Assembly: GCF_000150275.1 (NCBI RefSeq)
Contig: NW_002060953.1
Location: 1,523,693-1,587,692, forward strand
Source of the DNA: Trichoplax adhaerens
Lineage: Eukaryota > Animalia > Placozoa
Length of the DNA stretch: 64,000 bases
Direction: 5' to 3'
In this document: piece by piece, positions 5,663-63,300 of the stretch
Layout: each line of letters opens with the position of its first letter
Position numbering within the stretch: the stretch's first letter is position 1
The notes under the pieces: generated by a model
Seen by the model: only the letters and a program-made list of their open reading frames with translations
Told to the model about the DNA's origin: nothing
Database searches by the model: none
Translations under genes and position numbers: made by a program

Positions 5663-8401
5663 TTATGAAAGAATTTCGGCAACTTGGTCAACAGTGTTGA
5701 TTGAATGTATTTTATTGTTAGGAGATTGGTGTTCCTTCTGAGTTTCATTGCAGCCAATATTAGTGGTGGGTTCCTGTGTATTCGTAGATTTTTCTCGAAT
5801 ACCTCCTTTAGCAAAAGTAAAATGAGAAATATTTTTAGTGGCTTGTGCCCTTGTATTTAAATGGGGTCGAAAAAATATAATATACAACTTGGGAAGAAAT
5901 AAGAAAATCATAGGAGCTGCCCCTAATAAGAGGGTATTTGTTATGCTTAACGCAATAGTAGCGACGCCTGAGGTAAAGGAATCAACCATAAACGTGGCAA
6001 TCGCAATTATACTAACAGCAAGTGTAGACATGAAAATATATTTTGACTCATTAAAATTTTCAGGAAGAGAGCGCGTTTTATAAGCTAGATATAAACAAGT
6101 TGAGACAATGACTATGCTCCAACAGACTAAGTTAATATGTCCATAAAAATATTGAATATTACAATCAATGACAGTTTGATTCCCATCTCGATATTTTAAT
6201 AGAGGAAAGGGTAGGATGATTATAAAGGCAGTCAAGATTCCATTAGAAAGGAATAGAAAAGCCAAGATGAAAGCTACTTGGCAGTAAGTCTTGGTATATT
6301 GCTTCCTTCTACTGCTCATGTTTGTTACGTTCTGAAATATATTCTTGACTTGATTTGTTTTACATAATATAGTGGTGTATATTCCGATGCAACTCGTAGT
6401 AACAAGATAATTCTTGACAGCACATACTTCAGGAGTGGCAGGCAATAAATGGAGGACAGATACTAGTACCAGTAAAGCAAGGAAGGCTAATAGTAGATTT
6501 ATTAATATGAAATTGGAGCCCTTAACTATAGGTGTCTGTCTTTTTGCGATCATAATGGTCCAAATAAATATTAATAATAGCAAGTATAAACCTATTGCAA
6601 CATAACATATTATTGAAATTGGACTAGTATATGATAGCTTTAAAATTGATAAATCAGCGCAATATGTTCTATTTATGTCTGGATTAGTTAGAATTGGGCA
6701 TTTAGTACAAGTAGATTGATTTGTTGTATTAGAAATAGTCCTATTTTGACATAAACGACATGACCAGCAGCATGATCGATGTTGCAACTTTATTCGTCTA
6801 TCTTGATACATATAATATCCTGGAAGACAGTCTTGCGAGCATCGTGACAGGGGTTTATTATTCCCAAATAGATGATGATTCCACACAATACTTTCTTCAT
6901 TAAGAATTAGACCTTCGTTTTGATTCCAATAACCAATATCAACGGGTTCAAATCTTGACGTATTTGAATTCATCGATGATTGCAAATTAACAATATTAAA
7001 GGATATCTGACTGTTGCCATTAGGTGCAAACCGAAAAGAACGACTTGAGATACCATCAAAACGAATCTTACTTAAAATATTATTAAATTGCTGATTATTA
7101 AACGATTTTTCAGATATTGATGGGCAATAAGTTTCGTTACAGCCTAGATATTTATGTAGAGCATGAGCTAATGCTAATGTAGCATCCATAACGAAAGCTG
7201 AAATTGGACTTATTTTATAAAATGCTTGAAAATATCGAATTCTAGTCTTATTAAATGTACAATTCGGTATTTTAGCATCTATGCTAAGTATTTCTTGTAA
7301 GGCTTGTCTAAACCAGATGTTATCTAAATTATTACATAAATTAAGGCGATCCAGATAGAGATTAAACGCTTGCATAGTAACAGAATTGAAGGAAATGCCG
7401 ATTACCCCATTAAGGATACTTGATCTAATAGAATAGATTGACGGAGATATCAACCAGTGATAGGAACCGATCCAAGTTTTACCTGTTAGCTGATGGATAT
7501 CAGCTTGTTGAAAGAATCGATAGATGATTAATTCATTACCTAGTAGAACAACTACTTCTGATTTAGTCTGATTCTTTAATTTTAAAATAATTTTAGTAAT
7601 GGAAGACAAAGTATAGTTCTGATCAATCATCAATATCTCATCATAACATATGCCGTGATTTTGGGGTAGTCGGTTAATATCTTGAATAATATTTTCACTT
7701 ATGGTATTTCCAGCAATGACAATTGATATCCAATTCCAGTTAAAATAAGTTATAATCTCTTTAATGGCATACCAATATAGATCATCCGGTACAGAAGTAG
7801 AATAAAAGTAAGGAAATTGTTGCTGATCGGTTAAAGACTGATTGAAAAAATAGCTAACTTGAGTAAAGTGATTTTTGCTTGTATACGATGCCGTTTTAAC
7901 GGTTATATTGTATAATTTGGCACCAATAACACCAAATATAGGGGAAGAATTAGCCGAAATATTGTAAATTGGTTCTGGTAGACTAGATGGAGCGTTATTC
8001 GTATTATTGATTTTTGTATGGCTTTGCCCTGTATTCGAAAGTTTTTGATTGGATAAAACACTGCTGAGTAATTCCATAGTTTGGTTAATAGATGAAGAAG
8101 AATCTAGAAGTGTCCAACCAACTTGAATATTGGGTAGCAAAGCTGGGTTATGATTGATTAATTCCTCAATAGTATAAATCATAGCTTGAGTAAGTTGGAT
8201 ATTTTCCGGGTTAAAATACCGAGATAAATTGGACGATTGGTTCTTGTAATCTACTGTGTTAGGAAAAATACCCACTAACTGCACTTGACCTGGTTTAAAA
8301 GTACTGGATTGTGAATTACATAGTTGAAAGTAGCTATGAAAAACAAAATTGGAAAGCCACAATAGAAATAAGGAGCAAAACGATTTAATATGGTTCTTCA
8401 T
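5663..8401 (-). CDS. Class C GPCR (mGluR/CaSR-like), array copy 1, 912 aa, single coding exon
   Basis: Signal peptide; VFT (GIFPN, QAMIY, FNWNWIS, MDATLALAHAL); 9-Cys domain (RCSQDC..CCWSCRLC..CTKC..C); 7TM with TPIVKGSN, RSLPENFNESK and FLPKLYII. Confidence 0.95.
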   Translation of the reverse strand: MKNHIKSFCSLFLLWLSNFVFHSYFQLCNSQSSTFKPGQVQLVGIFPNTVDYKNQSSNLSRYFNPENIQLTQAMIYTIEELINHNPALLPNIQVGWTLLDSSSSINQTMELLSSVLSNQKLSNTGQSHTKINNTNNAPSSLPEPIYNISANSSPIFGVIGAKLYNITVKTASYTSKNHFTQVSYFFNQSLTDQQQFPYFYSTSVPDDLYWYAIKEIITYFNWNWISIVIAGNTISENIIQDINRLPQNHGICYDEILMIDQNYTLSSITKIILKLKNQTKSEVVVLLGNELIIYRFFQQADIHQLTGKTWIGSYHWLISPSIYSIRSSILNGVIGISFNSVTMQAFNLYLDRLNLCNNLDNIWFRQALQEILSIDAKIPNCTFNKTRIRYFQAFYKISPISAFVMDATLALAHALHKYLGCNETYCPSISEKSFNNQQFNNILSKIRFDGISSRSFRFAPNGNSQISFNIVNLQSSMNSNTSRFEPVDIGYWNQNEGLILNEESIVWNHHLFGNNKPLSRCSQDCLPGYYMYQDRRIKLQHRSCCWSCRLCQNRTISNTTNQSTCTKCPILTNPDINRTYCADLSILKLSYTSPISIICYVAIGLYLLLLIFIWTIMIAKRQTPIVKGSNFILINLLLAFLALLVLVSVLHLLPATPEVCAVKNYLVTTSCIGIYTTILCKTNQVKNIFQNVTNMSSRRKQYTKTYCQVAFILAFLFLSNGILTAFIIILPFPLLKYRDGNQTVIDCNIQYFYGHINLVCWSIVIVSTCLYLAYKTRSLPENFNESKYIFMSTLAVSIIAIATFMVDSFTSGVATIALSITNTLLLGAAPMIFLFLPKLYIIFFRPHLNTRAQATKNISHFTFAKGGIREKSTNTQEPTTNIGCNETQKEHQSPNNKIHSINTVDQVAEILS

Positions 8402-11938: not shown

Positions 11939-14100
11939 CCTTTTACAGATTTAAAGGAAAAATCAATGATACTTGCCGTAGCTTCTTGCTTTTGGATTTA
12001 ATTCAGGATGGAAAGAATAATACCAATTTTCGTGAAAGGCAGAAAAATAATGCAACTCCTCCACTGTATAATGTAATAAGAGCATCTAAGCTAGTAACTA
12101 GGCATTCATCTAGCAATAACTCAAAGAAGAGGTCGATTGTACTAATGACTATTATTAAAATAGTCGTTAATAGATATCGTTTGATTCACTAAAATTATCT
12201 GGGAGATGACGACTTTCATAATTAAAAAAAATTAACAGATGCAATATGGTAATCTATACCATTTCATTTAAGTAAATAAAATAGATTAGAACATTACTTA
12301 GAAATTCCATTTGATTATCAGCTTTGGGTTACCAATATAGTTCTGATGGTGTACTTAAGCTTATTATAACTGAAATGCTATTAGCGATCAATAAAACAAG
12401 AACTATCATGAGAATTTGATTATGATTTTTAGTTAATTTATTTCTGAACTCACTTTGATTAAACTTGTGCAAAAATATTACATATATTCGATAAATTTTA
12501 CATAACTTCGTCGTATCCCTACCTATATATGCTGTCGTTGCCAAATATAATCTTGCTTGACAGACAAGAACGGATGATTCTAATATAAAGGCAGTTGATG
12601 CAGGAATACATAATGCAGTAAAAATCAAAAATATTAAGAAGCAAGTAATTAGATACTTTACGACAGGTGTATTTCGTTTAGTGCTTATAGTTATCCAAAT
12701 TACGACCACAATTATAAAATATATAAACTCAATTAAATAACTAAAATCGAAATAGGGTCATTAAACTGTTTCTTTGCTAGTGGCAGATTGAAACATTTAG
12801 TCTCGTTATTGTTTGGATCAGCATCTAACAAACATAGAATACAATTATGTCCATTACAACTCTTAGGTATATCTGCATGATATGATTGACAAATTCGATA
12901 AAATCGACAACATGATTAATATCGATAATACAATGATTCCTTTGATTGTAAATACTGACCAGGAAGGCAGGTATTTAAACATTGTGCTTCTGGTATCTGA
13001 CCCCATGATTGGTTAGCGTTCCAAATTATACTAGCTATATTAATCAATAAACCACGTCTTTGATTCTAATAGCAAATTATAACAGGTTTTGTAGCTTTAT
13101 CTAATGTTTCTGTCTCTCTTTTTAAGTTAACAATATCAATTGAGGGTATGCTGGGTGTATTTTCGCAAATAGAAAAGAATGACTAGAGATTCCTTTAAAT
13201 TGGATAGATTGTAATATGCCATTGAATTAATGATGATTTAATGTTAGATTTTCAAGTCTTGAACAATATATTGCATTACAGTTTGATATACGACCTAATG
13301 AATGTACTAATGCTAAAACAGCATCCATGAAAAATATTGAGTGAGCATCAATCTTGTAAAACTGATGGGAATATTGAGTTTTCCAACTGATGTCAAGTCC
13401 GTAATTTGCAATAAAGCTGACATTATTAAAAACCAATTTTTATGAATATTTGACGCCATGCTTTTGCAAACCAAATATTTCGAATGTAATTCCATAAATC
13501 GAGTTCAATTAAAAAGGTTTTGTATTTGTGAATTTCATTTGAATTAAATGCAACAGCGAGAGCTCCTTCAAGTATATCAGCGCTTATAGAATAAATTGAC
13601 CGCGATATTAATCATTCTACCAAGCCAATCCATGTTTTCCATCTAAATTTTGACTTTCGGCTTGTTTCAATAATTAGTATAAATAATGTGTATTGCCAAG
13701 AAGTAAGACGATTGGTGATTGAGATTGATTTTGTAGTTTCACAATAATATATTTTATATCTGAATGTTCAGATTTATCTCGAATAAAGAATATTTGATTG
13801 GAGCATAAATGATTTTGTCGTAAAACTAACTTAGTTTAATGTATGTTATTTTTAGTAACTGTATCGCCAGCAACGACGATTGTAATCCAATTCCATTTGA
13901 AATAGTTTATTACTTCGGGCATGACATACCTATCAAAGTAGTCGGGAATTGAGGTACGATAAAGATACAGATCGCAATTGAATTTGGTACCACTAATACA
14001 ACTATTGGAGATTTACGGAATTTTTAATAAATTCGTACAATTTGCAATGGAAAGGGTAGTATTTAGTGACTATGCGCCAATAATCGAAACTATGGATGGA
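11939..14100 (-). pseudogene. Class C GPCR pseudogene with frameshifts and stops, N-terminus missing, C-tail running into an assembly gap
   Basis: Colinear minus-strand fragments: SIVSIIGA, YLYRTSIP, NYFKWNWITIVVAG, FFMDAVLALVHSL, TKRNTPVVK, LCKIYRI, SRHLPDNFSES, HPELN and ASIIDFSFK, separated by stops and frameshifts. Confidence 0.9.
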
Positions 14101-14503
14101 TTAATGATTAGACTTTAAATGACGAAAATACTTGAATATGTCGATGCTTTAATATCAATATAGCATTGATGATTAAATGGTATTGCGGATGATTGATACC
14201 GTTGTAAATGGTGATACCTTACGTATAACGTACCATTGGAATAAAATTAATTACTAATTACCGTACATTTTAGGCCTTATAAAGAATATATATTGTATAA
14301 GTAGCCAGATGGCTGTAAGGATTGATAATAGTAGGATGTATGTAGTATTTGTGATTCGTAATAGACTGTTAGGATAAAAATGATTAAACATCTTAACTAT
14401 CGACGTACGAACATTTTCTATCTCTATGCTATCTACTTATCGTAACGGCAGTCTACTAAAAGACTGGAATCGTATTTTCCTACGGAGGTTACCAGAATGT
14501 GAG

Positions 14504-16432: not shown

Positions 16433-19201
16433 TTATTCGTAGCAGTCACTGTCTTTTGAAATATTGACAACAGCAATTGGTTCTGGGTGCACTTGTGTTG
16501 TATTCGATCTGCGTTCTAATAATGTTGTCATAGTTCCTGAGCTAGAGCTTGACGTAAAGAATCCATTAGATTTTGTAGACTTACCAGAACTATGAAAGGA
16601 ATAATTAGTTATACTGGACATGATTTGTTGCCGAGTATTCAATTCTGATTTATAAAAGATAATATAGAGCTTGGGAAGAAATAAACAAAGCAATGGCGAA
16701 GAACCGATGATTAAAGTAGTTATCCCTCTTACGCTATCAGCCATACTTCCGCTTACTATAAATGTAATAGGGAAGCAACAAATTCCTAAAACCACTATTA
16801 ACAGCGATGATAGATAAATATGTTTTGATTCATTGAAATTATCAGGTAATGAGCGTGCTTTAAACGCAAAGTAGAGGCTAAGTAGTCCTAAAACAGCCAT
16901 CCACGTTAATAAGTTGATATCGAAATAGAAATTGTCAACATGACATAATATTTCCACTTGGTTATCATATGTGCGCTGCATTTTAATATTAATAGGTTTG
17001 GAAATAACTAAGCAAAGTAAAATTCCATTGACTACTAGTATAATAGTAAAAATAAAAGTAAATTGACTTCTATTCTTTGTTAAATGTGCCAGTTTTGCCC
17101 TCTTATTAACCGGATTGTGAAATATCGTAGAAACTTGATTTGTTTTACAAAGTATAGTTGCATAAACACCTATAACAAATGTGGTTATCATAAATATCCG
17201 TGTATAACAAATGGCTATGGTTGGCTGGGCTAGGAATAGAAAAGAAGCTGGTACACCTATTGCATGAAAAAATAGTAATAAGCTAGTAAGTTTAAAATTA
17301 GAACCTTTAACGATTGGAGTATTGCGCTTAACAATAATGACCGTCCATATGACAATTAAAAGGACAAAATATATCGTTACTATGATAAAATAAATGATTT
17401 TCATCGGTCTTCCATATCGCGCTTGGACTAATGGCAATGGTACACACTGCGTATTATTATGATTTGGATTGGTTAAATTTGGACACTGCGTGCAATAAAG
17501 AGAATTCATTTTATTCGTGATGCTATGCCCCTGACATTTCTTACAAGTCCAGCAGCAAGATAATTGACTCTGATGAATTTCTAAACCTTGATACATATGA
17601 TAGCCGGGAAGGCAATCTGCGGAACATCGTGATACAGGTATTTGAGTCCAAGGCTTATTTCCATTCCAAATGATTTTGTTGTCACTAATTAATAAGCCAC
17701 TTTTCCTGTCCCATGAACCAATTACAACTGCTCTTATTCTACTGTGTCCTTTTACCAATATTCTTTGCAAATTGACAATATCAAGAAGTGAATCTGTGTT
17801 TCCATCTGATCTAAAAGTAAATGCATAGCTTGATTTGCTAGCGAAATGAACACGACCTAAAATATCGTTGAAAAGCTCTCTGTCCAGGCTAGATGTTTGC
17901 GTTAGTGAGCAATGAGTATAATTACAGCCTAATAAACTATGCAAAGCATGGCCGTAAGCCAAGACTGCATCCATAACGAAGACTGCTTTAAAGCTTGGAG
18001 AATAGAATGAATTTCCCAACGATCTTTTCCATTCTCCATTTAATGTGCAATTGGCAACAGTTTTATCTACATCTAAACCTAATTCTGTTAACTTTTTCCG
18101 CCATAATTTCATAAACCACGGGTTGCCTAAATTATTGCAGAAATTGAGTTGGTGTAAATATTCGTCAAATCCTTTTATAGATTGACTATTGAAAGCAATA
18201 CCAATAGCACCGCCAATAATGCGATAATCAATTTGTTGAATTTTTCTTGATGTTAGCCAAGTATAGGAACCAATAAATGTTTTACCGGTCAAATTTTGAG
18301 CTTGTGCTTCCAATAAGAAGCTGTAGATAGTAGTTTCCTTGCCAAGAAGAACGATAGCTTGAGCTCGAGACTGATATTTTAGTTTCGATACAACGTTAGC
18401 GATTGCTTCCAGAGTAGCATTGTTTCCTAGTCGATAGATTTCTTCGTAGCATATTAAATGTTTATTTTGAGCTTCACTTTTGCTAGATTGAATCATTTCG
18501 AAAGTTGATTTGTCTGTGAGAACAAAAGAAATCCAGTTCCATTTAAAATAATTGATTATATCAAATATATTTTTAATTTGAGTAGTAGAGGATATAGATG
18601 TGCGATAGAAATATGAAAACACTTTACGGTTATTTAATAATTTGTCAAAAGAAAAGTAACTAATCTGTGGTATCTTTAAGCTGCTAGTCAATGCTGCCGT
18701 AGAAATGGTAATATCTTCATTTTTTGCACCGATTAAGCCAACTATAGGTGACGAATTTGTATAAGGACTAATTCTAGATTGCGTAACATTGTTATCAGTA
18801 AACTCTAAATTACACCGCAACTGTGGGAAGTTTCGCCTCTCAGATAGTATTAAATTAGAGGCAACATTTTGTAAGGCGACAGTACGATTTTCACAGGAAT
18901 CGATGATTTTCCAGCCAATTTTAATGCCTGGTAATAAATAAGGATTGTTATTGATAAACTTATCAATAGCATAAATCATAGCTTGAGTTAACTGTACATT
19001 TTCCGGGTTTAAGTTATAGCATTGTCTGGTTAAAGGATCATATCGGCCGGAATTGGGAAAAATTCCCTGCAGTAGAAATTGTCCTGATTTTGTGGCTACC
19101 ATAGTTGCTGTAGTAGGCTTGAAGAGTGACAAGATTGCCAAATAGTGCAGTAACAGGCTAATGAGAATAGTAGTCATTGCACTAAAATACTGATATTTCA
19201 T
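16433..19201 (-). CDS. Class C GPCR, array copy 2, 922 aa from ATG 19201
   Basis: Same architecture as copy 1. The ORF track starts at TTG 19249. The first ATG (MKYQYF) at 19201 is followed by a signal peptide. Confidence 0.95.
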   Translation of the reverse strand: MKYQYFSAMTTILISLLLHYLAILSLFKPTTATMVATKSGQFLLQGIFPNSGRYDPLTRQCYNLNPENVQLTQAMIYAIDKFINNNPYLLPGIKIGWKIIDSCENRTVALQNVASNLILSERRNFPQLRCNLEFTDNNVTQSRISPYTNSSPIVGLIGAKNEDITISTAALTSSLKIPQISYFSFDKLLNNRKVFSYFYRTSISSTTQIKNIFDIINYFKWNWISFVLTDKSTFEMIQSSKSEAQNKHLICYEEIYRLGNNATLEAIANVVSKLKYQSRAQAIVLLGKETTIYSFLLEAQAQNLTGKTFIGSYTWLTSRKIQQIDYRIIGGAIGIAFNSQSIKGFDEYLHQLNFCNNLGNPWFMKLWRKKLTELGLDVDKTVANCTLNGEWKRSLGNSFYSPSFKAVFVMDAVLAYGHALHSLLGCNYTHCSLTQTSSLDRELFNDILGRVHFASKSSYAFTFRSDGNTDSLLDIVNLQRILVKGHSRIRAVVIGSWDRKSGLLISDNKIIWNGNKPWTQIPVSRCSADCLPGYHMYQGLEIHQSQLSCCWTCKKCQGHSITNKMNSLYCTQCPNLTNPNHNNTQCVPLPLVQARYGRPMKIIYFIIVTIYFVLLIVIWTVIIVKRNTPIVKGSNFKLTSLLLFFHAIGVPASFLFLAQPTIAICYTRIFMITTFVIGVYATILCKTNQVSTIFHNPVNKRAKLAHLTKNRSQFTFIFTIILVVNGILLCLVISKPINIKMQRTYDNQVEILCHVDNFYFDINLLTWMAVLGLLSLYFAFKARSLPDNFNESKHIYLSSLLIVVLGICCFPITFIVSGSMADSVRGITTLIIGSSPLLCLFLPKLYIIFYKSELNTRQQIMSSITNYSFHSSGKSTKSNGFFTSSSSSGTMTTLLERRSNTTQVHPEPIAVVNISKDSDCYE

Positions 19202-22270: not shown

Positions 22271-22394
22271 ATTTTAGTCAAGCTCATATATTCCTTTATC
22301 ACGTAACAATCAAAGGCTCAGTACAAAGCAACAGAAATTACTATTGTGTGAATATTAGTTATCACCTCTGTAAATACATTGCTCTGCACAGAGT

Positions 22395-22444
22395 NNNNNN
22401 NNNNNNNNNNNNNNNNNNNNNNNNNNNNNNNNNNNNNNNNNNNN
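22395..22444. other. Assembly gap
   Basis: Run of N. Confidence 1.
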
Positions 22445-48528: not shown

Positions 48529-51500
48529 CACGGGTTTCCAATTTAGCAATGTTTTTGCTTTAGTTATGTCAGGTTTTCGTTTTCGAGGATCATCTTGTGG
48601 CATTGGCTTATTTACTATAGGTACTTTACCGCCTGTGAGAGCATACACATGCATGTAGAAGATAACGGTTTATAGATCGAATATCAACAAGCTACAAATT
48701 ATTTTTCACGCTCTATAAGCTAATAGTATTTGAAAAATGGTATTATAATTTGATAGCCAAGACATAAAACTGGTAAACTACTTTCTCAATAGACAACTTT
48801 TGACGGTAGTAGTAGCGAAACAAACCTACGAATTTTCTTACAAATTCAGCGAAATCAGCAATTGTATGCTCTTCAGGATTACCCTTTCAAATTTTAATGA
48901 TATATCCGCAGTAACTCAGTCGATAAGTATAAATAATATTTTACAATTGATAAAAAGATGGAACAAACAAGATTTCTCTTACCAGGTTAACAGGAGAAGA
49001 GACGTTGCTATTCATTAACGTGATCAGCCCTCTGACAAGGTCGCTGATATAACCATATTAATGCGTTATAAAAGAATAAATGATTTTATTGTTTGTATTG
49101 CTACTTACAATTCCTTTTAAGTTTTTAACTATCAAAATATCATACCTAACATATTGGAAAGATCTAGTTTGTTTACCATTTCCGTACACCTATAAGAATT
49201 TAAATAGTAAAATCTTATGAATACTGCAAACAGTACGCTACAGCATTAATACAAACCGTTAGCGGTTTCCCTTGCAGGGCTTGAATAATAAAATTGCTTA
49301 CTACCCTACCTAAAGCACGATACCGAACAAATCAGTATAGTGCATCTATCAATTTTATCGTATATGGAGAGTATTAAGAATATTTGTACTAACATACCAT
49401 CATTTACGTGCATTCTTGGTCCATAGGTATTGAATATTCTCGCAACACGAACAGCAACATTTTCCTGCGTTGAATTGAAAAATATATCTTTAGGGCTATG
49501 AATTATTAGTTATATAACATTTAATCAGAAAGATATTTCACTTCTTTACCTGCTTTTTGTAAGCGTAGCATAACGTTTCTGCAATTCTTTTACCTTCATC
49601 ATAACAAGCACGGGGTCCAATCGAATTTACATGACCCCAGTAACCTTCATGCTGAGGATGAATCTACAGAAATATTGATATTAATTACTTGGTACCTGCA
49701 TTGTTAATAGCTGATATTACGCTAGTCTTGAGCTTTATAACGGTATACCTCAGGATCTAGATGATATAGCAATAATGCAACAGTGAAAATAGCAAACATC
49801 AACATTGAAGATAATTGGACGAAATTAAAATTTAGTTACGCGTATATCAGATAATTGAGATACCTCCGTAGACTTCAGAGGTTGATGCTAATAGAAGTCT
49901 CGCTTTGACGCGTTTAGCTAAGCCTGATAAAATAAGAATTTATGAATACAGCTACTCGTACCACCAACATTACAGTATAACCTATATAGATGTCGCTTTA
50001 CCAAGCATGTTCATAGTTCCAATGGTGTTAGTTTTTATTGTCTTTTGTAGAATAGAATGTAAAAGAGTTTAAAAAATTATGTGGTAAAGTACTAGTAAAT
50101 TATCATAGAAATTTGATTGCGTAGGCAAATCTTCTAGGATATTAACTTAGCAGTAATTCAACTATACCAATTCGTTGTTATAAAACTATTTCGCCGGAGA
50201 AATATACTCACTTTAATTGGATTATACATATAATGCGGAGGAGAGGCAGGTGAAGCTAAGTGATATATTTGATCCACTGTAAAATCATGGATGTTTTTTT
50301 AGTAAATTTAATTTAAATTAGTTCAATGTAGATCATACTGCACCTTCAATTCGTAAGGGTTCCGTAATGTCATGATGTAGTAGTTCAAAGTTTTTATGAC
50401 CAATCCTGTAGTGAATGGTTAGTAATGAGAATATCTATTTGCTAGGAAGATTGTATCAACGTGATTTGCAAAAATGATTATGTGTGGGGCCTTACCAATG
50501 GTCGACATTCACTTTTCGTCCAGTAAAAAAGTTGTCAGCTACTGTGACCTAAAGTAGAATGATGAATATCTATTATGTATATGCTATGAATGAATGATAG
50601 ATATAAATTAATATACGCGTAATTTACGTACTTCGTGACCAGCAAGCATTAGCGCATCTGCAAGATGAGATCCAACAAATCCAGCACCACCAGTAATCTA
50701 GTTATGACATTTAAACAAATAATAAGTACGATTCTTGCAGCATTTCACTGTTGATTACAAAAATATGTAATTAAGAGGTAACATCATCCATACGTAAGAT
50801 AAACTTCACAGTTAAGACAGAAGTACCGCAAAAATTGGAATATGATGACTATCCTATAATATCACTAACCAAGATTCTCAAGCGTTGGCCTTCTATTAAT
50901 GATTTCACAGGTGGGTAATTTTTTTGCCTATCATCAATTAACGAAATTGCCAAGTTAAAGGAATTATTAATGTAGCTCCATCATTTCTTTTGTATTCTAT
51001 CTCTTCGAGTTGTGATTGTAAGTCACGATATCCCATTTTAAAAACTTCTATCAACTCGTCTATAAATAAGACCTTACTTGTTTTCCAACTTCTCCACTCT
51101 CAGCTGAAGATCATCTAAAGACTATAGTTACATGTCATTACAAGGGGAATGGTTAGTCCTATCATAGTCACTGTACAATTTAAGCAAACTCTTAAAGGTG
51201 CATGATGCAATAGACGATTGATTCGTTTATCAGGTTATTGACCATTATTGATATTGCTAGTCATGATTACGTTAGAAATTGATTGCTTATTCCATGGCCG
51301 ATTGCTTGCTATTCTCGTCACTATACCTGTATATAATGCTTACTCCATTTATTCAAGATCTCGGTCTGATCTATTGTATTTGCCCTACAAAGTATCGGTT
51401 ATACAAGTTGCCATAGAATTGGCAATGATGAAATGAAGTAGACTGAAAGGTTAATCACGCCATTGGAGACACCATTGGCACTCTCTGCAGTTAGCAGGAT

Positions 51501-51763: not shown

Positions 51764-51899
51764 TTTTGATTCTCCCAGCTGACTTATACGGCTATAACAC
51801 AGTCGTTAACAGCATTAGCGATGGATTATTCAATATATTTGTTGAATAGATATACGCTATTTGTCGTATCATGCAATTATCATCTTGCACATCGAGTTA

Positions 51900-54041: not shown

Positions 54042-56756
54042 TCATGAACTGGTGATAGTGGCGCTTGAATCAGATGATTTGTAAGACTGTCCACATTTTG
54101 TGTGTCCGGATAGGTTGCTAAATGTAAACTGCGTAATACTACTCTTTATTCCAGCTTTGGTATTTAAATCCGGCCGAAAGTAAATAACGTAAATTTTAGG
54201 AATAAAGAAGCACAGTAAAGGCGAAAGACCAAAGGTTAGCATAAATAGGGACAAGAGATAGTCACGAACCATACCGTATAAGAGGAATAATGCAGGACTA
54301 CTAATAAATTCCAAAGCCAGAAGCAGAATTGAAGATAAATAAATATATCTAGATTCATTGAAATTGTCTGGTAATGAACGGGCTTTGAAAGCGAGATAGA
54401 CGCATAGTAGACCCAATATGCCAGAGGATACCAGCTGATATATGCTGGGGTAACTGCTTTCTTCGAAACAAATTATCGTCAAATATCCTTCAATTCTCAC
54501 ATTTTTGGTAACTTTTATAGGATAGATTAGCATTAAACAAACTACAATACCAATATTGATAAATACAATGAGGAAAATGAATAAAATTTGTACGCTTGTT
54601 TTTCTCAGGGGAGCAGTTTTAGAATCCTGATTGATAGCATTTTGAAAAATGACCGAAATTTGATTTGTTTTACATAAGATTGTGGCAAGTATACCTATAT
54701 CCATAAGGGTGACTAATATTACTCTGGCATGGCATACTATCATTGATGGAGGCCTTAAAAATAGACCACCTGCGGGGACACATAAGGAAATAAAAAAGAG
54801 TAATATATTGACTAATGTAAAGTTAGAACCTTTTACAACTGGAGTATCCCTTTTCCGAATCATGACTGACCAAATCCATAGCAAAACAATTAAGTATAAG
54901 CTCGCGACAATATAGAATACAATGGAAATAGTATCATCCCAACGAATTGTTACAACTTTCAAAGGAATACATGCAGTTCTGTTGGCATTGGACTTAGTTT
55001 CATTTGAACACTGTATACAAGAATATTGATTTGTTGTGTTGGTGATACTTTGCTTGGGGCATACTTTACATTTCCAACAGCATGGACGATAACGTTTATC
55101 AATACTGTTATCATGATACCAATATGTCCCTGGTAGGCACGGGGATGAACATCGCGAGTTAGGAGCGTTATTTCCAACTGAATTATTATCCCAATCAATT
55201 AATGATTCGTTAATAACTACACCAGCCTCTCTATCCCAATAACCGATCATAACTGGCCTCACTGTTCGATTTTCATAATTAGTTTCTCGTTGCAAATTAA
55301 CAATATCTAGTTTCATAATTGGACTACCTTCGAAATCAAACTGGAAATTATTACTTGACACACCAGGAAACTGAATACGGTTAAGAAAATCATTAAGACG
55401 CAGCTTGTTTAAGTCGATATCATTTAATGGTGGGCACGAGGTTGAATTGCAGCCTATCGCGTTATGAAATGCGTTAGCTAGCGCAAGTACAGCATCCATA
55501 ACAAATATAGAGATATATGATGGCGAATGAATTGAATTAAGGAAGGATAACTGTAGTTGCTCAATTGTACATTCTTTCAAAACTGTACTGATGTTATATC
55601 CTGCTTTACTAAGTTGAGTTTTCAGTACATCCATGAACCATGGATTATCGCCATTATTACATAGGTTCAGGTTTTTTAAGTAACTATGATAACGATCTAA
55701 TGATCGTCCTTTAAATTTAAAGCCAATACTACCTCCGATAACATCGGCCCTAATATTGTACATGAGTGAAGAAGTTAACCAAGTATAAGAACCTACGAAG
55801 GTCATACCAGTTAAGTTTAATGCTTCGGCAACCTTAAAGAAAGAATAAACTACACGTTCGACACCAATCAATACAATTACACGTGATGATTGATTTTTTA
55901 GATTCAAAACAACATCGACCAACTCAGATTTGGTGTAGTTATCATTTATTTTACCCAAATAGCTATAGCAGATATTATATGAAGGACCAGCGAAATAGAT
56001 AAATTTGGATATTAAATCTATGGCTGTATTGCCTGCAAAGACAAATGAAACCAAATTCCAATTAAAACGAGTTAATAATTCCATGATTGCTGTCGCCTGA
56101 AAAGATGCCGGTGGGGATGTGCGATAAAAGAATGGAAAGTATCGACGAAGGCTTAGTGTATAGTCGAAAGAAAAATAGCTTATTTGACAGACTCTGAGGC
56201 TACCGGTATAGGCCGCAGTTGCCACCGTAACGTCGTCCGACTCATCACCTATAACTCCAATTATGTACGAATGATTGGACATATGCTCATGGTTGTGACC
56301 TCTGCTTACCATATCTGACAACCTATTATTATTGCCACTGGTTTGTATCAGCTTACATTGTAAATTTTGATAATCCTTTCTTTCTGATAAAATTAGACTA
56401 GATGATAAGGCAGAAATGGCTATTTCACGAGAGCCACAGGAATCGATAACAATCCACCCGACCGGAATTCCAGGTAATAAATTTGGATTATTATTGACTA
56501 ATTCCTTAACAGTGTATATCATAGCCTGTACAAATAGTATATTTTTTACACTGATATCGCTACATTGTCGACTTGTCGCGTTATATCGACTGGAAATCGG
56601 GAAAAGAGCTTGTAATTGTACTAATCCAGCCTTCATGGACATACGTCGACTTTGAGCATATCCAATATTGTTACTACCAGGATAAATTGAAATTGTTATA
56701 AGGAGAAGCGCAATGAAATAGTTAAGCCGCTGAGAAATTGCACAACCGGTAGCCAT
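54042..56756 (-). CDS. Class C GPCR, array copy 7, 904 aa
   Basis: Signal peptide, VFT, 9-Cys domain, 7TM with RSLPDNFNESR and FIPKIYVI. Confidence 0.95.
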   Translation of the reverse strand: MATGCAISQRLNYFIALLLITISIYPGSNNIGYAQSRRMSMKAGLVQLQALFPISSRYNATSRQCSDISVKNILFVQAMIYTVKELVNNNPNLLPGIPVGWIVIDSCGSREIAISALSSSLILSERKDYQNLQCKLIQTSGNNNRLSDMVSRGHNHEHMSNHSYIIGVIGDESDDVTVATAAYTGSLRVCQISYFSFDYTLSLRRYFPFFYRTSPPASFQATAIMELLTRFNWNLVSFVFAGNTAIDLISKFIYFAGPSYNICYSYLGKINDNYTKSELVDVVLNLKNQSSRVIVLIGVERVVYSFFKVAEALNLTGMTFVGSYTWLTSSLMYNIRADVIGGSIGFKFKGRSLDRYHSYLKNLNLCNNGDNPWFMDVLKTQLSKAGYNISTVLKECTIEQLQLSFLNSIHSPSYISIFVMDAVLALANAFHNAIGCNSTSCPPLNDIDLNKLRLNDFLNRIQFPGVSSNNFQFDFEGSPIMKLDIVNLQRETNYENRTVRPVMIGYWDREAGVVINESLIDWDNNSVGNNAPNSRCSSPCLPGTYWYHDNSIDKRYRPCCWKCKVCPKQSITNTTNQYSCIQCSNETKSNANRTACIPLKVVTIRWDDTISIVFYIVASLYLIVLLWIWSVMIRKRDTPVVKGSNFTLVNILLFFISLCVPAGGLFLRPPSMIVCHARVILVTLMDIGILATILCKTNQISVIFQNAINQDSKTAPLRKTSVQILFIFLIVFINIGIVVCLMLIYPIKVTKNVRIEGYLTIICFEESSYPSIYQLVSSGILGLLCVYLAFKARSLPDNFNESRYIYLSSILLLALEFISSPALFLLYGMVRDYLLSLFMLTFGLSPLLCFFIPKIYVIYFRPDLNTKAGIKSSITQFTFSNLSGHTKCGQSYKSSDSSATITSS

Positions 56757-58400: not shown

Positions 58401-59299
58401 TAAGTTATTTGCTCCATATTAAATTTCTTCAACTCCATTTAACATTTTGTAATTGGTGGGTATGTGCTTAGTCGATTATTTTTTTAAAGTCAAATCTAAT
58501 TAAGATACAATATATCAGTCAATTTGTCTGAAAACTTAAGGTTAGAAATTGTAAGGAACTTTGCGACATGGAGAATACCTGTAGGCTAAGTGTTTTGGTC
58601 TTTGAAGAGCTGTTCACGTTAAGTTTAAGCTAATGTGTGACGAAGTTCTAGAATCTTCCAGATACCAATTTATTAATTTATAAAATAATTCCAAAATAAA
58701 GAGAGAGTATGCGCTAATTTTTGCTAATTAAATAAGAGATTTACTCAAATACTTAGGAAGCCAATGAAGGATTCTCCTCGGCATGTAAAGATATGAATAA
58801 TATAACCTTAGTATTGGAAACAGCAACGATTTATGGGTGCTATTGTCAGACCGATTATAATATCCATGTAACAACATCAATACTATTAGAAGGAAAAATA
58901 TTAACTTCTTTCTATTGACCATAGCCGTTTTAAAATATTGTGCATACATAAACTCACGCTTTGCTTAAGGTCAGTGCAATTAGTGGATAAATTAATAGGG
59001 GATTTGAAGAATCTTGTTGGAAAATATTCTTGTTAATTTGAAGTTTTAATCGATTTAATAATTATTAGATATAATCTAATCTAATCACTATCATCTTTGA
59101 CACTAGTTGAAACTATTTAATGTTTAATCTAAAACTGCGGGGCAGCTAAGTTTACTTCTGCAATAACTAAAAGATTACAGGCATCTGCCAAAATAAATTA
59201 GATTATTAAAAAATCATTTACGATTGTAACTATCACCAATTTTTTTGGAGTTGAGAGTAATACCATTAATACTATATGTAAAATAAGTCACATAGTTTA

Positions 59300-59950
59300 C
59301 AGATTGTAATTGATTATGTAGCTACTGCAGACAAATAATGATCCGTATTTCTGGAAGAATCTGAGGTATTAAAATTGTATAAGCTGATAGAAATATTGCT
59401 GGCATAGCTGTAATCTTTGGAATTCCTCTAGCTACCTAGAAATATGTCGGAATGGAGGTCACGACCAGGCAAGATAATAGTAATATGACTCAGACATTTA
59501 ATCGCGCTTCATTAAAGTTTTCAAGTAGGGATCGAACTTGAAAAGCTATAATATTGTAGGTAAAACTTATAAAGTCATTACTACCGGAGAACTGAGATAT
59601 ATGCAAACTAATTGAACTTCGATGAAACTAGTGAGAACTGGCTTGGATAACAGTTGGCGATAAAAACTTAATCCAAACATCAGTGCTACGATACATATTC
59701 AAATAGCAAAAAATAAATGTAACTTGACTCCTTATTTTTGTAAGATTTTTTAGCATGGCGCTGTAGCTAACTAAATTTCGAAATATTAATCACAATTTTC
59801 TTCAATTTGCATGCTACGATGGAAGTTATACAAATTGATTTAATTTTATGACTGCAATTTGATAATACGCGAGGTAAATTATCTGGCGAAAACCTATTTA
59901 TGATTCAGTTTGACAAAATGAGATCTTTTAAAAGCTTTCTTAATTATGAT
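59300..59950 (-). pseudogene. Decayed 7TM remnant of a class C GPCR (not in the ORF track)
   Basis: The minus strand gives, in order, KAFKRSHFVKLN (cf. KGSNFxLxN), IAVIKLNQFV* (cf. VICKTNQV), and then in one frame AFQVRSLLENFNEARLNV*VILLLSCLVVTSIPTYF*...ILPEIRIIICLQ*LHNQ. Confidence 0.8.
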
Positions 59951-60621: not shown

Positions 60622-63300
60622 CTAAATTGCAGATATGGCAGTGCTTCCATTATTTCTTGATGGCATTTGATTAGGATATTTGGTTTGCTTGTCAACCTTT
60701 GCAAATGTAAACTTAGCAATACTAGCTGCAGCTTCATATTGTGTATTCAAATGCGGTTGACGAATGATAATGTACATTTTTGGCAAGAAGTAACAAAATT
60801 GAGTCACGAATCCATAAAATATCATCATTAAACAAGACAGTATTGATCGCAACTGACCATGAAAAAAATACATGACTGGAGTTACGGTTAATGCAAGAAA
60901 TGCATACAAAATACTAGCTATCAAGATATATCGAGCATCATTATAGTTATCCGGTAATGATCTTATACGAAAGGCAAATACAAGGCCAACGGTAACTGCT
61001 GTTGTCCATAGCACTACAGCAGCAGTAAAGGCCGGAAAGCTGAAAACTTCGCATGATTTTACGAGCTGTTGTTTGTCGTTCTCATATTTGATAATTTTTA
61101 GTGGTTGATATACGATTAACCCAACGATAATCGCGTTAGTAATAGTCATAGTTACAATGAGAACAATAACTTGATTTCGTGTTTTTGACAATTTCTTGTA
61201 TAAGGACCGCTGACGAAAGCCATTTCGGAATATAGCTGCTACTTGAATTGTCTTGCAAATGACAGTAACTGCTACGCCAGTCTGACTATTAGCAGTGAGT
61301 AGTAATCTAAATGTGCAATTGAAAACAGTACTGTCACAAAGAAACATGATTGAAGCAGGAAGGGACATAGCGTTATAACCCATTAAAATATTAATCAACG
61401 TAAAATTGGATCCTTTAATTACAGGAGTATTTCGTTTGATGATAACGACAACCCAAATAAATATCGAATTAATCAAGAAGATAAACCATAGGCAGCAAGC
61501 AATAATAAAGTATTTATCTCTAAATGAAATATTAATGATTTCGTAACCAATACATTTCGTTTTGTTCTCATTTGGAGCAGTAAATGGCTCACATTTAGTG
61601 CAATTTGACTGATTGGTAGAATTAGTTATAGAATGAAAGTAGCATTTAGTGCAGAGCCAACAACATTTTAGTGATTTCTTGTCAAGACTATTGTAATAAC
61701 GGTAAGTACCGGGCTGACAATCATCAGAACAGCGAGCAACTGGTACAATACCACTATTCCATTTTATTTTTGTTTTATTAATAATTAAACCGTAATCTTC
61801 ATCCCAATATCCAACTTTGACATGTTTTATTGGACCTTTACCGATACTCTTCGCTGGAACTTGCAAGTTAATTATATTGTAAAGTAAATGATTAGTTCCG
61901 TCGGCGCGAAAGTGAAAATCGTCGTTTGATATGCCCTTAAAGGTTACCTTGCTTAAATATTCATTTAATTTTAGTCGATCGTAATGAGATGCAAGATTAT
62001 CTACTGGAGAACAGTGTGTTGAATTGCAACCTAATTTGCTATGTAGTGCGTAAGCTAAAGCTAATGCTGCATCCATAACATAAGCAGCGGAGTCATGCAT
62101 GGAATAAAATGATTCTGAAAAGTAACGTTTGAGATTATTATTAATTATACAGCTTGCCATTATGGATTCAGTATTATTTCCAAGAGATTGGAGTTTTTCT
62201 GACCAAGCTGCTATAAACCAAGGATTCTTAATATTATTACAGAAGTCAAGTTCGTCTAAATAAGATTGAAAGTCCTGTAACGAACCATCCATTATATCCA
62301 TACCCAATGCACCACCAATTACGCTAGGATTGAGTGCATTAATTCTAGCAGAACTTAACAAATCATACGACCCTATCCATGTCTTACCTACTAAACCCTC
62401 GGATTCTACTTTTCGAAGGAATGGATAAATAAGCGCTTCACCACCAGCGAGAATAATGACGTTCGAACGAGTTAAGTATTTAAGTTTTAATACAATTTCC
62501 TTTAAATTAGATTGCGTGTAATTGTCATTTATAATTCCGGTATATCCAATACAAATTTCATTATTAAAAAGTAATTTAGAAACAATTTTTTTATAATTCT
62601 CGGCAAAATTTGATCCAGCTACGATAATAGATATATAATTCCAGCGAAATTTTGCAACAATATCAAGGAATACTAGCACCTGCATCGTTATTGGTGAACG
62701 TGAACGATAGAAGTATGGAAAGAGTTGACGAAGTGATTGACTTACGTGGGATGTACCGTAACTGATTTGAAGAAAATACAAACTACTAGTATATATGGCC
62801 AACGAAGTTGAAATGTCATCTGATTTCTCACCGACAATTCCAAGAATTGGAGTGGTCATTGTGTGATTATATTGAAATTTTATGTTACTATCAGTCCATT
62901 GATTAGGTATATGGTTGAATTTTTGGTATGAAGGCCAGTCAAAATTGGCTGGATTACTGAACATTAATTCATAACTTACCAATTTCATAGCCATTTCTCG
63001 AGATGAGCAAGAATCAATTAGTGTCCAACCAACTTTGATACCAGGCAATAAGTTTTGATTGGCATTGATTAAAATATCTATAGCGTATATCATAGCTTGT
63101 GTGAGCTTTACATTGACTAAATTGAATTCATAGCATTGATTTAAGGTACTGTTATAATGTAAGGTATTAGGAAAAACACCTATAATTTGAATATCTCCTG
63201 GTTGATAAGAGTAAATATGGCAATGTGAAGACTTTATCTTTACAAAAGTAACAATGACGAAAAAAAAAATATAACTTTTAATAAGTTGCTTTAGGACCAT
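60622..63300 (-). CDS. Class C GPCR, array copy 8, 892 aa; appears the most divergent intact copy
   Basis: Signal peptide, VFT, 9-Cys domain, 7TM with RSLPDNYNDAR and FLPKMYII. Confidence 0.95.
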   Translation of the reverse strand: MVLKQLIKSYIFFFVIVTFVKIKSSHCHIYSYQPGDIQIIGVFPNTLHYNSTLNQCYEFNLVNVKLTQAMIYAIDILINANQNLLPGIKVGWTLIDSCSSREMAMKLVSYELMFSNPANFDWPSYQKFNHIPNQWTDSNIKFQYNHTMTTPILGIVGEKSDDISTSLAIYTSSLYFLQISYGTSHVSQSLRQLFPYFYRSRSPITMQVLVFLDIVAKFRWNYISIIVAGSNFAENYKKIVSKLLFNNEICIGYTGIINDNYTQSNLKEIVLKLKYLTRSNVIILAGGEALIYPFLRKVESEGLVGKTWIGSYDLLSSARINALNPSVIGGALGMDIMDGSLQDFQSYLDELDFCNNIKNPWFIAAWSEKLQSLGNNTESIMASCIINNNLKRYFSESFYSMHDSAAYVMDAALALAYALHSKLGCNSTHCSPVDNLASHYDRLKLNEYLSKVTFKGISNDDFHFRADGTNHLLYNIINLQVPAKSIGKGPIKHVKVGYWDEDYGLIINKTKIKWNSGIVPVARCSDDCQPGTYRYYNSLDKKSLKCCWLCTKCYFHSITNSTNQSNCTKCEPFTAPNENKTKCIGYEIINISFRDKYFIIACCLWFIFLINSIFIWVVVIIKRNTPVIKGSNFTLINILMGYNAMSLPASIMFLCDSTVFNCTFRLLLTANSQTGVAVTVICKTIQVAAIFRNGFRQRSLYKKLSKTRNQVIVLIVTMTITNAIIVGLIVYQPLKIIKYENDKQQLVKSCEVFSFPAFTAAVVLWTTAVTVGLVFAFRIRSLPDNYNDARYILIASILYAFLALTVTPVMYFFHGQLRSILSCLMMIFYGFVTQFCYFLPKMYIIIRQPHLNTQYEAAASIAKFTFAKVDKQTKYPNQMPSRNNGSTAISAI

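What the first reader, a model, noticed from the sequence alone, without database searches (positions are those of the whole stretch)
5663..63300. Tandem array of intronless class C GPCRs evolving by birth and death: a candidate chemosensory receptor repertoire
Seen: eight intact, clearly diverged paralogues plus at least three dead copies, all on the minus strand head-to-tail. Each has a single coding exon of about 2.7 kb, while neighbouring UXS1 has an intron roughly every 60 coding bases. Established: mGluR, CaSR, T1R and V2R genes are multi-exon, and clustered, pseudogene-rich receptor arrays are typical of chemosensory families (ORs, V2Rs). Inference: a retroposed class C founder expanded locally into an independent V2R/taste-like sensory system, plausibly in an early-branching animal.
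Basis: partly seen in the sequence, partly recalled or inferred. Interest (0 to 1): 0.85.

Follow-up and report, generated by a model that had tools for sequence, protein, structure and literature searches.

The report
Placozoan class C receptor gene array

Summary
The window is Trichoplax adhaerens scaffold DNA. It holds eight intact minus-strand ORFs of 892-933 aa, each with ANF_receptor, NCD3G and 7tm_3 domains, and five dead remnants. No ORF touches an assembly gap.

The eight genes belong to a 14-gene clade (SH-aLRT 100) that continues beyond the window. The clade has one-to-one orthologues in a diverged, probably placozoan, genome. No non-placozoan relative exceeds about 32% identity.

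The expansion and a nutrient-sensing reading are published (Nikitin et al. 2023, PMC10133484), so the core finding is known.

The retroposed-founder idea is only partly supported. At least 32 of the 38 cysteine-rich-domain class C genes in this genome are single-ORF, at about ten loci, and so is a coral homologue. Five sister genes keep one intron at the same codon and phase as a hemichordate gene. Intron loss is therefore derived, but it predates this array.

Two points were not found in the papers searched. The array clade has lost all five core alpha-amino-acid-binding residues: Ser to Asp/Glu, Thr to Phe, Asp/Glu to an invariant Tyr, and two positions hypervariable. This parallels mouse V2Rs. 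The VFT is not more diverged than the 7TM domain.

Expression evidence is thin.

The parts
5663..8401 (-). R1 (A01): intact single-exon class C GPCR, 912 aa
   Evidence: The ORF is and the Pfam ANF_receptor+NCD3G+7tm_3 match. The Trichoplax sp. H2 genome annotates the identical-length gene as one exon (L036 10001-12739). Against H2 there are 4 nonsynonymous and 3 synonymous differences.
16433..19201 (-). R2 (A02): intact single-exon class C GPCR, 922 aa from the first ATG
   Evidence: The H2 orthologue is also 922 aa. dN/dS for the 3' half against H2 is 0.105. The PKxY motif of TM7 is present.
23573..26287 (-). R3 (A03): intact, 904 aa
   Evidence: Thin RNA-run contigs lie over the CDS. Against the DNA-like run X1 there are 6 nonsynonymous and 7 synonymous differences.
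29027..31747 (-). R4 (A04): intact, 906 aa
   Evidence: RNA-run contigs lie at 29594-30521. Against X1 there are 3 nonsynonymous and 5 synonymous differences.
37028..39787 (-). R5 (A05): intact, 919 aa; nearest paralogue of R4 (53% identity)
   Evidence: It is 91% identical to gene model TRIADDRAFT_59558.
44141..46942 (-). R6 (A06): intact, 933 aa from the first ATG
   Evidence: It has a one-to-one orthologue, P0003, in another placozoan-like genome.
54042..56756 (-). R7 (A07): intact, 904 aa
   Evidence: Its orthologue P0011 is a single ORF on Logan contigs of SRR30664516/7.
60622..63300 (-). R8 (A08): intact, 892 aa
   Evidence: It is sister to A09/A10, which lie just beyond the window.
11939..14213 (-). 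psi1: nearly full-length pseudogene with many frameshifts and stops
   Evidence: tblastn pieces fall in three frames. The profile search finds eight or more stop-free pieces. The same wreck in H2 spans profile positions 66-866 in nine or more pieces. Nucleotide identity to H2 is 97.35%, against 98.2-98.7% in the other aligned blocks, which include R1 and part of R2.
21502..22294 (-). psi2: remnant with an internal deletion (profile 260-473 joined to 707-755), closest to R2 (58% identity)
   Evidence: The deletion lies in continuous sequence. The 50-N gap at 22395-22444 lies upstream of it.
34563..35239 (-). psi3: short relic of the VFT end and TM region
41974..42640 (-). psi4: fragment (about aa 377-603 of R4, 46% identity) abutting gap 41135-41971
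   Evidence: No N-terminal half is found in the continuous 42641-44140. The C-terminal part may be hidden in the gap.
59247..59786 (-). psi5: weak 7TM relic
   Evidence: tblastn gives about 25% identity. The profile hit at 59502-59573 has E 6e-4.
49157..50691 (-). Core of an intron-rich UXS1 gene embedded in the array (not part of the receptor family)
   Evidence: Colinear UXS1 motifs, from GGAGFVGSH to GKQTRSF, lie in all three frames on the minus strand. The motifs were recalled from memory and then found in the sequence.
28292..28845 (.). Dispersed ~550-bp repeat in the R3-R4 spacer
   Evidence: Depth is 80-370 times background in run X1. The own-genome search gave 214 candidate copies, and the 40 scored were 91-93% identical. 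There is no Rfam match.

Best explanation
**What it is.** The window holds the proximal eight genes of a 14-gene, placozoan-specific subfamily of class C GPCRs. Each protein has a signal peptide, a Venus-flytrap domain (VFT), a nine-cysteine domain (CRD) and a 7TM domain.

**How the array arose (shown).**
- It grew by repeated local tandem duplication.
- Several duplications predate the split from a diverged, probably placozoan, relative.
- At least one is recent: A09 and A10 are 96% identical.
- Copies have also died, leaving five remnants.

**Gene structure.** The single-exon structure is derived, because relatives keep introns at positions shared with a hemichordate gene. It was inherited from an older intron-free ancestor of at least 26 dispersed Trichoplax genes. 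That loss may have been a retroposition or another reverse-transcript-mediated event. It did not happen when this array was founded.

**Selection (shown).** The genes are under purifying selection.

**Function (inferred).** The genes are probably transcribed at a low level. The proteins most likely work as class C dimers: a ligand closes the VFT cleft and the CRD passes the change to the 7TM domain and a G protein.

**Ligand.** The cleft has been rebuilt (shown).
- All five core residues that class C receptors use to hold the alpha-amino-acid moiety are replaced.
- Three positions carry clade-typical substitutes: Asp/Glu, Phe, and an invariant Tyr.
- Two positions are hypervariable between paralogues.

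From this I infer that the ligands are not free alpha-amino acids. They are more likely a set of related molecules sharing a moiety held by the acidic and aromatic anchor, such as amine-bearing or cationic compounds or peptides. On that reading each paralogue is tuned differently, in functional parallel to the mammalian V2R shift away from amino acids.
For: **Architecture.** The Pfam domain matches are.

**Identity of the genome.** Trichoplax adhaerens.

**Extent and relationships.**
- The array extends to 14 genes.
- The array clade has SH-aLRT 100 and sits inside a placozoan-only clade, also 100.
- It has one-to-one orthologues P0011, P0003, P0013 and P0004.
- Two single-ORF genes lie in tandem on a contig of SRR30664517.
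- No non-placozoan hit exceeds about 32% identity among 1.84 billion representative proteins.

**Selection.** Pooled over four genes there are 18 nonsynonymous and 27 synonymous differences from close strains. dN/dS is 0.105 for the CRD and 7TM half of R2.

**Gene structure.**
- All 38 NCD3G hits lie in long ORFs.
- The C1411 genes have two exons, with a phase-1 intron in the Gly codon of L-G|V-F-x-I-P. This is the same codon and phase as in the Glandiceps gene.
- C1408b and Glandiceps share a phase-1 intron before (N)SIS in the CRD.
- The 26 intron-free genes form one clade with support 99.

**Pocket.**
- Among 16 array-clade sequences the five positions read Asp/Glu in 14, Phe in 12, hypervariable (93rd and 87th entropy percentiles), and Tyr in all 16.
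- All 20 comparison sequences keep Ser (Thr in one), Thr/Ser, Asp, Tyr and Asp/Glu.
- The roles of these residues come from PMC4977154 and PMC1764893.

**Transcription.** Contigs from the RNA runs lie mostly over the R3 and R4 coding sequence.
Against: - No ligand, G-protein coupling or cell type has been shown.
- The RNA evidence is thin: contigs at depth 3-24, and DNA carry-over in those libraries cannot be excluded.
- The VFT (40% mean identity) is not more diverged than the 7TM domain (35.5%) among paralogues. That does not fit a simple model of a diversifying ligand-binding domain on a constant signalling domain.
- Pocket positions were assigned by sequence alignment, not by a structure. 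The alignment around the Tyr218/236 position is the least certain.
- One tree nests the intron-bearing C1411 clade among intron-free genes (support 89). That topology would require more than one loss.
- Parallel intron gain at an AG|GT proto-splice site cannot be excluded. Scallop and ant genes have their nearby introns at other positions.
Confidence: 0.6

Rival explanations
1. A processed (retroposed) class C cDNA landed at this locus and founded the array, which then expanded in place into an independent sensory family.
For: - All array genes have an uninterrupted CDS.
- Intron loss is derived, not ancestral.
- Neighbouring UXS1 is intron-rich.
- Class C genes elsewhere have at least 6 exons (PMC1764893).
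- The hemichordate gene has about 11 coding pieces.
Against: - The nearest relatives at other loci are also intron-free: A17-A19, C1414a-c, C1410c-e, C1408a, C1412a/b and C1406.
- These form one clade with the array, so the loss predates the array.
- No multi-exon, CRD-bearing parent gene is present in the genome.
- No poly(A) tract or target-site duplication was looked for, and none is expected to survive at this age.
Confidence: 0.1
2. The array genes are amino-acid or nutrient receptors, like the mGluR, CaSR, GPRC6A, T1R1/3 and fish OlfC receptors. This is how Nikitin et al. 2023 read the whole Trichoplax 'mGluR-like' set.
For: - Trichoplax behaviour responds to glutamate, aspartate, glycine and GABA, and the expansion is interpreted as nutritional sensing (PMC10133484).
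- The domain architecture is identical.
Against: - All five core signature residues are replaced throughout the clade, including in orthologues.
- The carboxylate-holding Ser is replaced by an acidic residue in 14 of 16 sequences.
- Twelve other Trichoplax class C genes keep the full signature and are better candidates.
Confidence: 0.12
3. The receptors detect endogenous signals, meaning secreted peptides or small transmitters used between Trichoplax cell types. On this view they are paracrine receptors rather than environmental chemoreceptors.
For: - One-to-one orthologues are conserved between diverged placozoans.
- Purifying selection fits stable ligand-receptor pairs.
- The 7TM domain diverges as fast as the VFT, which is unlike classical odorant-type families.
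Against: - Tandem birth and death with pseudogenes and a recent duplicate fits environmentally driven families better.
- So do the hypervariable pocket positions.
- No data bear on ligands either way.
Confidence: 0.25

Closest known systems
Trichoplax 'mGluR-like' receptor expansion (Nikitin et al. 2023, PMC10133484; gene models TRIADDRAFT_59554-59566; Trichoplax sp. H2 models named 'Metabotropic glutamate receptor 7' and similar)
   Same: These are the same genes. The paper reports 34 mGluR-like receptors in four clades, three of them nearer to CaSR, taste and vomeronasal receptors. It describes lineage-specific expansion and proposes nutritional sensing.
   Different: The main text of that paper contains none of the terms searched for: intron, tandem, pseudogene, scaffold or binding site. 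Here the array clade is shown to lack the amino-acid signature, so 'amino-acid receptor' is doubtful for this clade.
Mammalian vomeronasal V2R genes (families A, B and D)
   Same: Both are class C receptors with the VFT-CRD-7TM architecture, in clustered, pseudogene-containing, lineage-specific tandem arrays. The core amino-acid-binding signature is absent from most members (PMC1764893).
   Different: The array genes are not orthologous to V2Rs. The clade is placozoan-only and at most about 30% identical to any vertebrate hit. Fish OlfC genes have six coding exons, the stated minimum for class C genes (PMC1764893), whereas these have one. V2R ligands and neuronal expression are known; here nothing is.
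Fish OlfC, CaSR and GPRC6A amino-acid-sensing class C receptors
   Same: The domain architecture is the same. PDB sequence similarity to CaSR (E 1.5e-78) is about equal to that for mGluR4 (E 3e-83).
   Different: Those receptors conserve Ser, Ser/Thr, Asp, Tyr and Asp/Glu in the proximal pocket. The array clade has Asp/Glu, Phe, variable, variable and Tyr.
Intron-free chemoreceptor families attributed to retroduplication (vertebrate ORs, TAARs, V1Rs and T2Rs; PMC11526382)
   Same: The CDS is uninterrupted, the genes lie in tandem clusters, and they evolve by birth and death.
   Different: Those families are class A or T2R-type 7TM proteins without a large ectodomain. Here a 2.7-kb VFT-CRD-7TM gene is intron-free, and the loss is shared with a coral homologue's state and with most class C genes of the genome.

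Membership tests
Class C (glutamate-family) GPCR | 7tm_3 transmembrane domain over its full length | tested here: met
   PF00003 matches positions 1-3 to 251 of 251, with E 1e-38 to 8e-48, in all eight genes. The TM7 PKxY motif was seen in R2.
Class C (glutamate-family) GPCR | Venus-flytrap (ANF_receptor / periplasmic-binding-protein type) ectodomain plus nine-cysteine domain | tested here: met
   PF01094 gives E 3e-36 to 5e-48, and PF07562 scores above its gathering cut-off, in all eight genes. There are 9-10 Cys in aa 501-600.
Amino-acid-sensing class C receptors (mGluR, CaSR, GPRC6A, T1R1/3, OlfC) | Five-residue proximal-pocket signature: Ser, Ser/Thr, Asp, Tyr, Asp/Glu (CaSR S147, S170, D190, Y218, E297) | tested here: not met
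   All five positions are replaced in 16 of 16 array-clade sequences, apart from a Ser at the second position of R8 and an Asp at the third of R1. All 20 comparison sequences keep them.
Vertebrate V2R / OlfC family | Common descent with vertebrate V2R or OlfC genes (orthology or nesting within that clade) | tested here: not met
   The array clade lies inside a placozoan-only clade with support 100. Vertebrate hits are about 27% identical; an example is the fused Polypterus 'CASR' model. No named V2R, T1R or CaSR sequence could be placed in my trees; for that I rely on PMC10133484.
Vertebrate V2R / OlfC family | Conserved six-exon gene structure | tested here: not met
   The array genes have a single-ORF CDS. 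The six-exon rule is from PMC1764893.
Retrogene (processed-copy origin) founding this array | Intron-free copy alongside an intron-bearing parent, with the loss mapping to the founder of the array | tested here: not met
   Intron-free relatives lie at about nine other loci and form one clade with the array. Only the C1411 cluster (one intron) and C1408b (one intron) retain any.
Retrogene (processed-copy origin) founding this array | Poly(A) remnant and target-site duplications | not tested
   These are not expected to survive at 32-53% protein identity between copies, so they were not searched for.
Birth-and-death multigene family | Paralogues of mixed ages, pseudogenes among intact genes, and some duplicates older than a species split | tested here: met
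   There are five remnants, and psi1 is shared with H2. A09 and A10 are 96% identical. Orthologues of A06, A07, A11 and A13 are found in a diverged genome.

The most novel reading that the evidence does not exclude
The array encodes a pre-neural, placozoan-specific chemoreceptor family. Its flytrap pocket was rebuilt around a conserved acidic residue and an aromatic Phe/Tyr anchor so that it recognises a ligand class other than amino acids, such as amines, cationic metabolites or peptides. Two hypervariable pocket positions tune each paralogue. This would be an independent parallel to the V2R departure from amino-acid sensing, in an animal without neurons.
Probability: 0.3. Interest if true: 0.65.

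Novelty: new member of a known kind. Interest (0 to 1): 0.38.

Why it matters
Placozoans have no neurons, yet they show food-directed behaviour. Which receptors read the environment is an open question.

The published view treats all Trichoplax mGluR-like genes as amino-acid receptors. This analysis splits them into two groups:
- About a dozen genes keep the amino-acid signature and are the better candidates for the glutamate and glycine responses.
- The largest tandem clade has lost the signature and should be screened against other ligands.

The analysis also gives a concrete case of near-complete intron loss in a large ectodomain GPCR family. One or two ancestral introns are retained in sister genes, which is useful for dating when and how class C genes became intron-free in non-bilaterians.

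The existence of the expansion itself is not new.

Tried and rejected
**Searches that led nowhere**
- The first whole-protein word search drew its words only from the VFT and returned only eight hits, six with Trichoplax names and two unnamed.
- A 7TM-region search added insect and echinoderm mGluR-like proteins but no CaSR, V2R or T1R. I therefore could not place named vertebrate families in my own trees. For that point I rely on PMC10133484 and on PDB similarity.
- Searching papers for the TRIADDRAFT identifiers found nothing.
- Rfam found nothing in the high-depth spacer repeat.
- P0075 (Montipora) was not on record for a gene-structure check.

**Closing gaps 2-4 with the H2 assembly failed**
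- The exact-sequence cluster look-up found none of my ORFs.
- Exact look-ups of R3 and R6 without the stop codon also found nothing.
- The single read-laying run had already been used on 24601-30600.

**Ideas considered and rejected**
- That run X1 is RNA: its depth is flat across genes and spacers, so it behaves like DNA.
- That the VFT is the fast-evolving domain: it is not.
- That the dead copies are only assembly-gap artefacts: the defects of psi1, psi2 and psi4 lie in continuous sequence, and psi1 is equally broken in H2.

**Steps not taken**
- No complex or structure prediction was run, because no claim in this report depends on one.
The C1411 genes were analysed from exon 2 alone.
Full report
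**1. What is in the window**

The window is G000:C1404:1523693-1587692 of a 105.6-Mb, 1414-contig genome. The best protein hits are Trichoplax adhaerens gene models; TRIADDRAFT_59558 is 91% identical to R5.

Eight long minus-strand ORFs are present. All eight match ANF_receptor, NCD3G and 7tm_3 over the full models and above Pfam's cut-offs. From the first ATG they encode 892-933 aa. Each begins with a hydrophobic, signal-peptide-like segment and has 9-10 Cys in the cysteine-rich region. Pairwise identity is 32-53%.

The Trichoplax sp. H2 genome annotates the R1 orthologue as a single 2739-nt exon and gives the R2 orthologue 922 aa. Both lengths equal my ORFs. The observation of eight intact, diverged, head-to-tail single-exon class C genes is therefore correct.

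**2. Assembly gaps**

The four gaps are at 11612-11938, 22395-22444, 41135-41971 and 47736-48434. None lies in or touches an intact ORF.

The H2 contig NOWV01000149.1 (L036) aligns colinearly with window 1-18009 at 97.4-98.7% identity. It has 361 nt where the window has 327 N, so that gap is a simple unread stretch.

I could not bridge the other three gaps. The exact-sequence look-ups failed, and the one read-laying run had already been used.

**3. Dead copies**

tblastn and a family profile find five remnants, all on the minus strand.
- **psi1 (about 11940-14213)** is broken into eight or more stop-free pieces. In H2 the same locus spans profile positions 66-866 in nine or more pieces and three frames. 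It is therefore a nearly full-length pseudogene older than the split between the two strains.
- **psi2 (21502-22294)** joins profile 260-473 directly to 707-755. This is an internal deletion in continuous sequence.
- **psi4 (41974-42640)** abuts a gap on its 3' side, but it also lacks its N-terminal half in the continuous sequence upstream.
- **psi3 and psi5** are short relics.

**4. Surroundings**

UXS1 motifs, from GGAGFVGSH to GKQTRSF, lie colinearly on the minus strand at 50691-49157 and switch among all three frames. An intron-rich UXS1 gene therefore sits inside the array, between R6 and R7. The motifs were recalled from memory and then found in the sequence.

A Tag-type methyladenine glycosylase ORF lies at 2759-3361.

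The array continues beyond the window. The 174 kb I assembled from the scaffold holds 19 long ORFs.

**5. Phylogeny**

In two trees the window's eight genes and A09-A14 form one clade with SH-aLRT 100. Inside that clade, sequences from Logan and ENA assemblies pair one-to-one with A06, A07, A11 and A13. One contig of SRR30664517 carries two such single-ORF genes in tandem. I did not establish the organism, but it behaves as a diverged placozoan. Several duplications are thus old.

Others are recent. A09 and A10 are 96% identical in nucleotides. A10 and A12 are 99.6% identical but are flanked by gaps, so they may be an assembly duplicate.

The array clade sits in a placozoan-only clade of 42 rows with support 100. 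In a full HMMER scan of 1.84 billion representative proteins, identity falls to 32% or less once the Trichoplax and placozoan-type hits are passed (hits named).

Solved mGluR4 and CaSR are about equally similar, at E 3e-83 and 1.5e-78. The copies are therefore monophyletic and are not orthologues of conserved receptors.

This agrees with Nikitin et al. 2023 (PMC10133484). [quoted passage not shown] The core of the finding is therefore already in print.

**6. Gene structure and the retroposition idea**

All 38 NCD3G hits in the genome lie in long open frames. The many 7tm_3 hits whose 7TM is split into exons have no NCD3G and look GABA-B-like.

At least 32 of the 38 genes have the whole VFT-CRD-7TM in one ORF. 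They are spread over about ten loci. They include C1410a/b, which group with bilaterian mGluR-like proteins, and C1395 and C1408c, which group with a coral-containing clade. A Pocillopora meandrina homologue is also a single 2667-nt exon. A hemichordate homologue, by contrast, spans 17 kb in about 11 coding pieces. Being single-exon is therefore not special to this array.

The single-exon state is nevertheless derived.
- The five C1411 genes have two exons.
- Their intron is phase 1 inside the Gly codon of L-G|V-F-x-I-P. This is the same codon and phase as an intron of the Glandiceps gene.
- C1408b and Glandiceps also share a phase-1 intron just before (N)SIS in the cysteine-rich domain.
- Scallop and ant genes have their nearby introns at other positions, so parallel gain is not excluded.

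In a 42-row tree the 26 intron-free genes of the placozoan-only clade form one clade that excludes C1411, with support 99. The larger tree nested C1411 among them with support 89.

The simplest reading is one complete loss of the remaining intron, by retroposition or cDNA-mediated conversion, in an ancestor of many dispersed genes. Dispersal and local tandem growth followed. A retroposed founder of this particular array is not supported.

**7. Are the genes in use?**

Differences from H2 and from the DNA-like run X1 total 18 nonsynonymous and 27 synonymous over four genes. dN/dS is 0.105 for the CRD and 7TM half of R2 and 0.37 for R1. This is purifying selection, though the counts are small.

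Three metatranscriptomic RNA runs give thin contigs, at depth 3-24, that lie mostly over the R3 and R4 coding sequence and rarely over unique spacer. That suggests low-level transcription but does not prove it. Contigs cannot show strand or level, and DNA carry-over is possible.

**8. Ligand pocket**

HMMER aligns the R2 VFT to mGluR4 without gaps across the key motifs. I used that alignment and a MAFFT alignment with comparison sequences. The residues compared are those that bind the amino-acid backbone in CaSR (S147, S170, Y218, E297; PMC4977154). They correspond to the five-residue core signature of Alioto and Ngai (PMC1764893).

| Core position (CaSR number) | Comparison set, n = 20 | Array clade, n = 16 |
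|---|---|---|
| Ser (S147) | Ser in 19, Thr in 1 | Asp/Glu in 14, Tyr in 1, Asn in 1 |
| Ser/Thr (S170) | Thr/Ser in all | Phe in 12 |
| Asp (D190) | Asp in all | hypervariable, 93rd entropy percentile of VFT columns |
| Tyr (Y218) | Tyr in all | hypervariable, 87th entropy percentile |
| Asp/Glu (E297) | Asp/Glu in all | Tyr in all 16 |

The comparison set is 12 other Trichoplax class C genes, two corals and six bilaterian mGluR-like proteins. The array-clade set is 12 T. adhaerens paralogues and four orthologues.

[quoted passage not shown] It notes that the signature is absent from most mouse V2Rs, which are taken to detect other cues.

I therefore infer that the array receptors do not bind free amino acids in the canonical way. 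An acidic residue sits where the ligand's carboxylate would lie, next to conserved aromatic residues. This points to a cationic or amine-bearing moiety or a peptide, but that is inference only.

Among paralogues the VFT (40.4% mean identity) is not more diverged than the 7TM domain (35.5%).

**9. Verdict**

It is wrong to place the retroposition at the array's origin.

A chemosensory role remains plausible and untested, and it has already been proposed for the wider family.

I did not find two points in the papers I could search. One is the loss of the amino-acid signature in this clade. The other is the evidence that the near-total intron loss is derived.

I class the finding as an uncharacterised member subfamily of a known receptor kind, of moderate interest. 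The C1411 genes entered the trees as exon 2 alone.

Noticed in passing
window 2759-3361 (+): This 200-aa ORF matches Pfam Adenine_glyco (methyladenine glycosylase) at E 1e-78. The same gene is annotated in the independent Trichoplax sp. H2 assembly (L036 15041-15622), so it is not contamination peculiar to one assembly.
   Followed up: partly
window 28292-28845: A ~550-bp dispersed repeat lies in the R3-R4 spacer. The own-genome search gave 214 candidate copies, and the 40 scored were 91-93% identical. Depth is 80-370 times background in a DNA-like run, and the element is also present in RNA-run contigs. It has no Rfam match. Copies also lie next to the class C genes C1411d and C1406.
   Followed up: partly
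window 24705-24956: One RNA-run contig (X11, depth 4) skips 250 nt with GT..AG ends read on the plus strand, which is antisense to R3. It could be a spliced antisense transcript, a paralogue or an artefact.
   Followed up: no
window 10768-11231 and 14198/14199: Two structural differences from Trichoplax sp. H2 were seen. A 464-nt stretch is present in the window but absent from H2. H2 has an 826-nt insertion at window position 14198/14199, next to the upstream end of psi1.
   Followed up: no
G000:C1404:1599568-1602233 and 1616981-1619645 (outside the window): A10 and the truncated A12 are 99.6% identical over 2.7 kb. A second block further on is 99.1% identical. Both copies are bounded by assembly gaps. 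This is either a very recent segmental duplication or an assembly duplicate.
   Followed up: partly
G000:C1411:1160633-1199004 (L040-L044): This is a tandem cluster of five class C genes, each with two coding exons. Exon 1 covers profile positions about 6-171. The intron is 1.5-4.1 kb, phase 1, in a Gly codon at the same position as in a hemichordate homologue.
   Followed up: yes
whole genome: Dozens of 7tm_3 hits have the 7TM split into two or more exons, in clusters on C1402, C1406, C1414 and C1411 (2.2-2.6 Mb). They have no NCD3G hit. These probably correspond to the 37 GABA-B-like receptors of Nikitin et al. 2023.
   Followed up: no
P0029 (Polypterus senegalus 'CASR protein, partial', 3927 aa): A fish gene model matches the query in 12 separate stretches. 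It is evidently several tandem class C genes fused by annotation. Summed bit scores therefore rank such fused models misleadingly high in the representative search.
   Followed up: no
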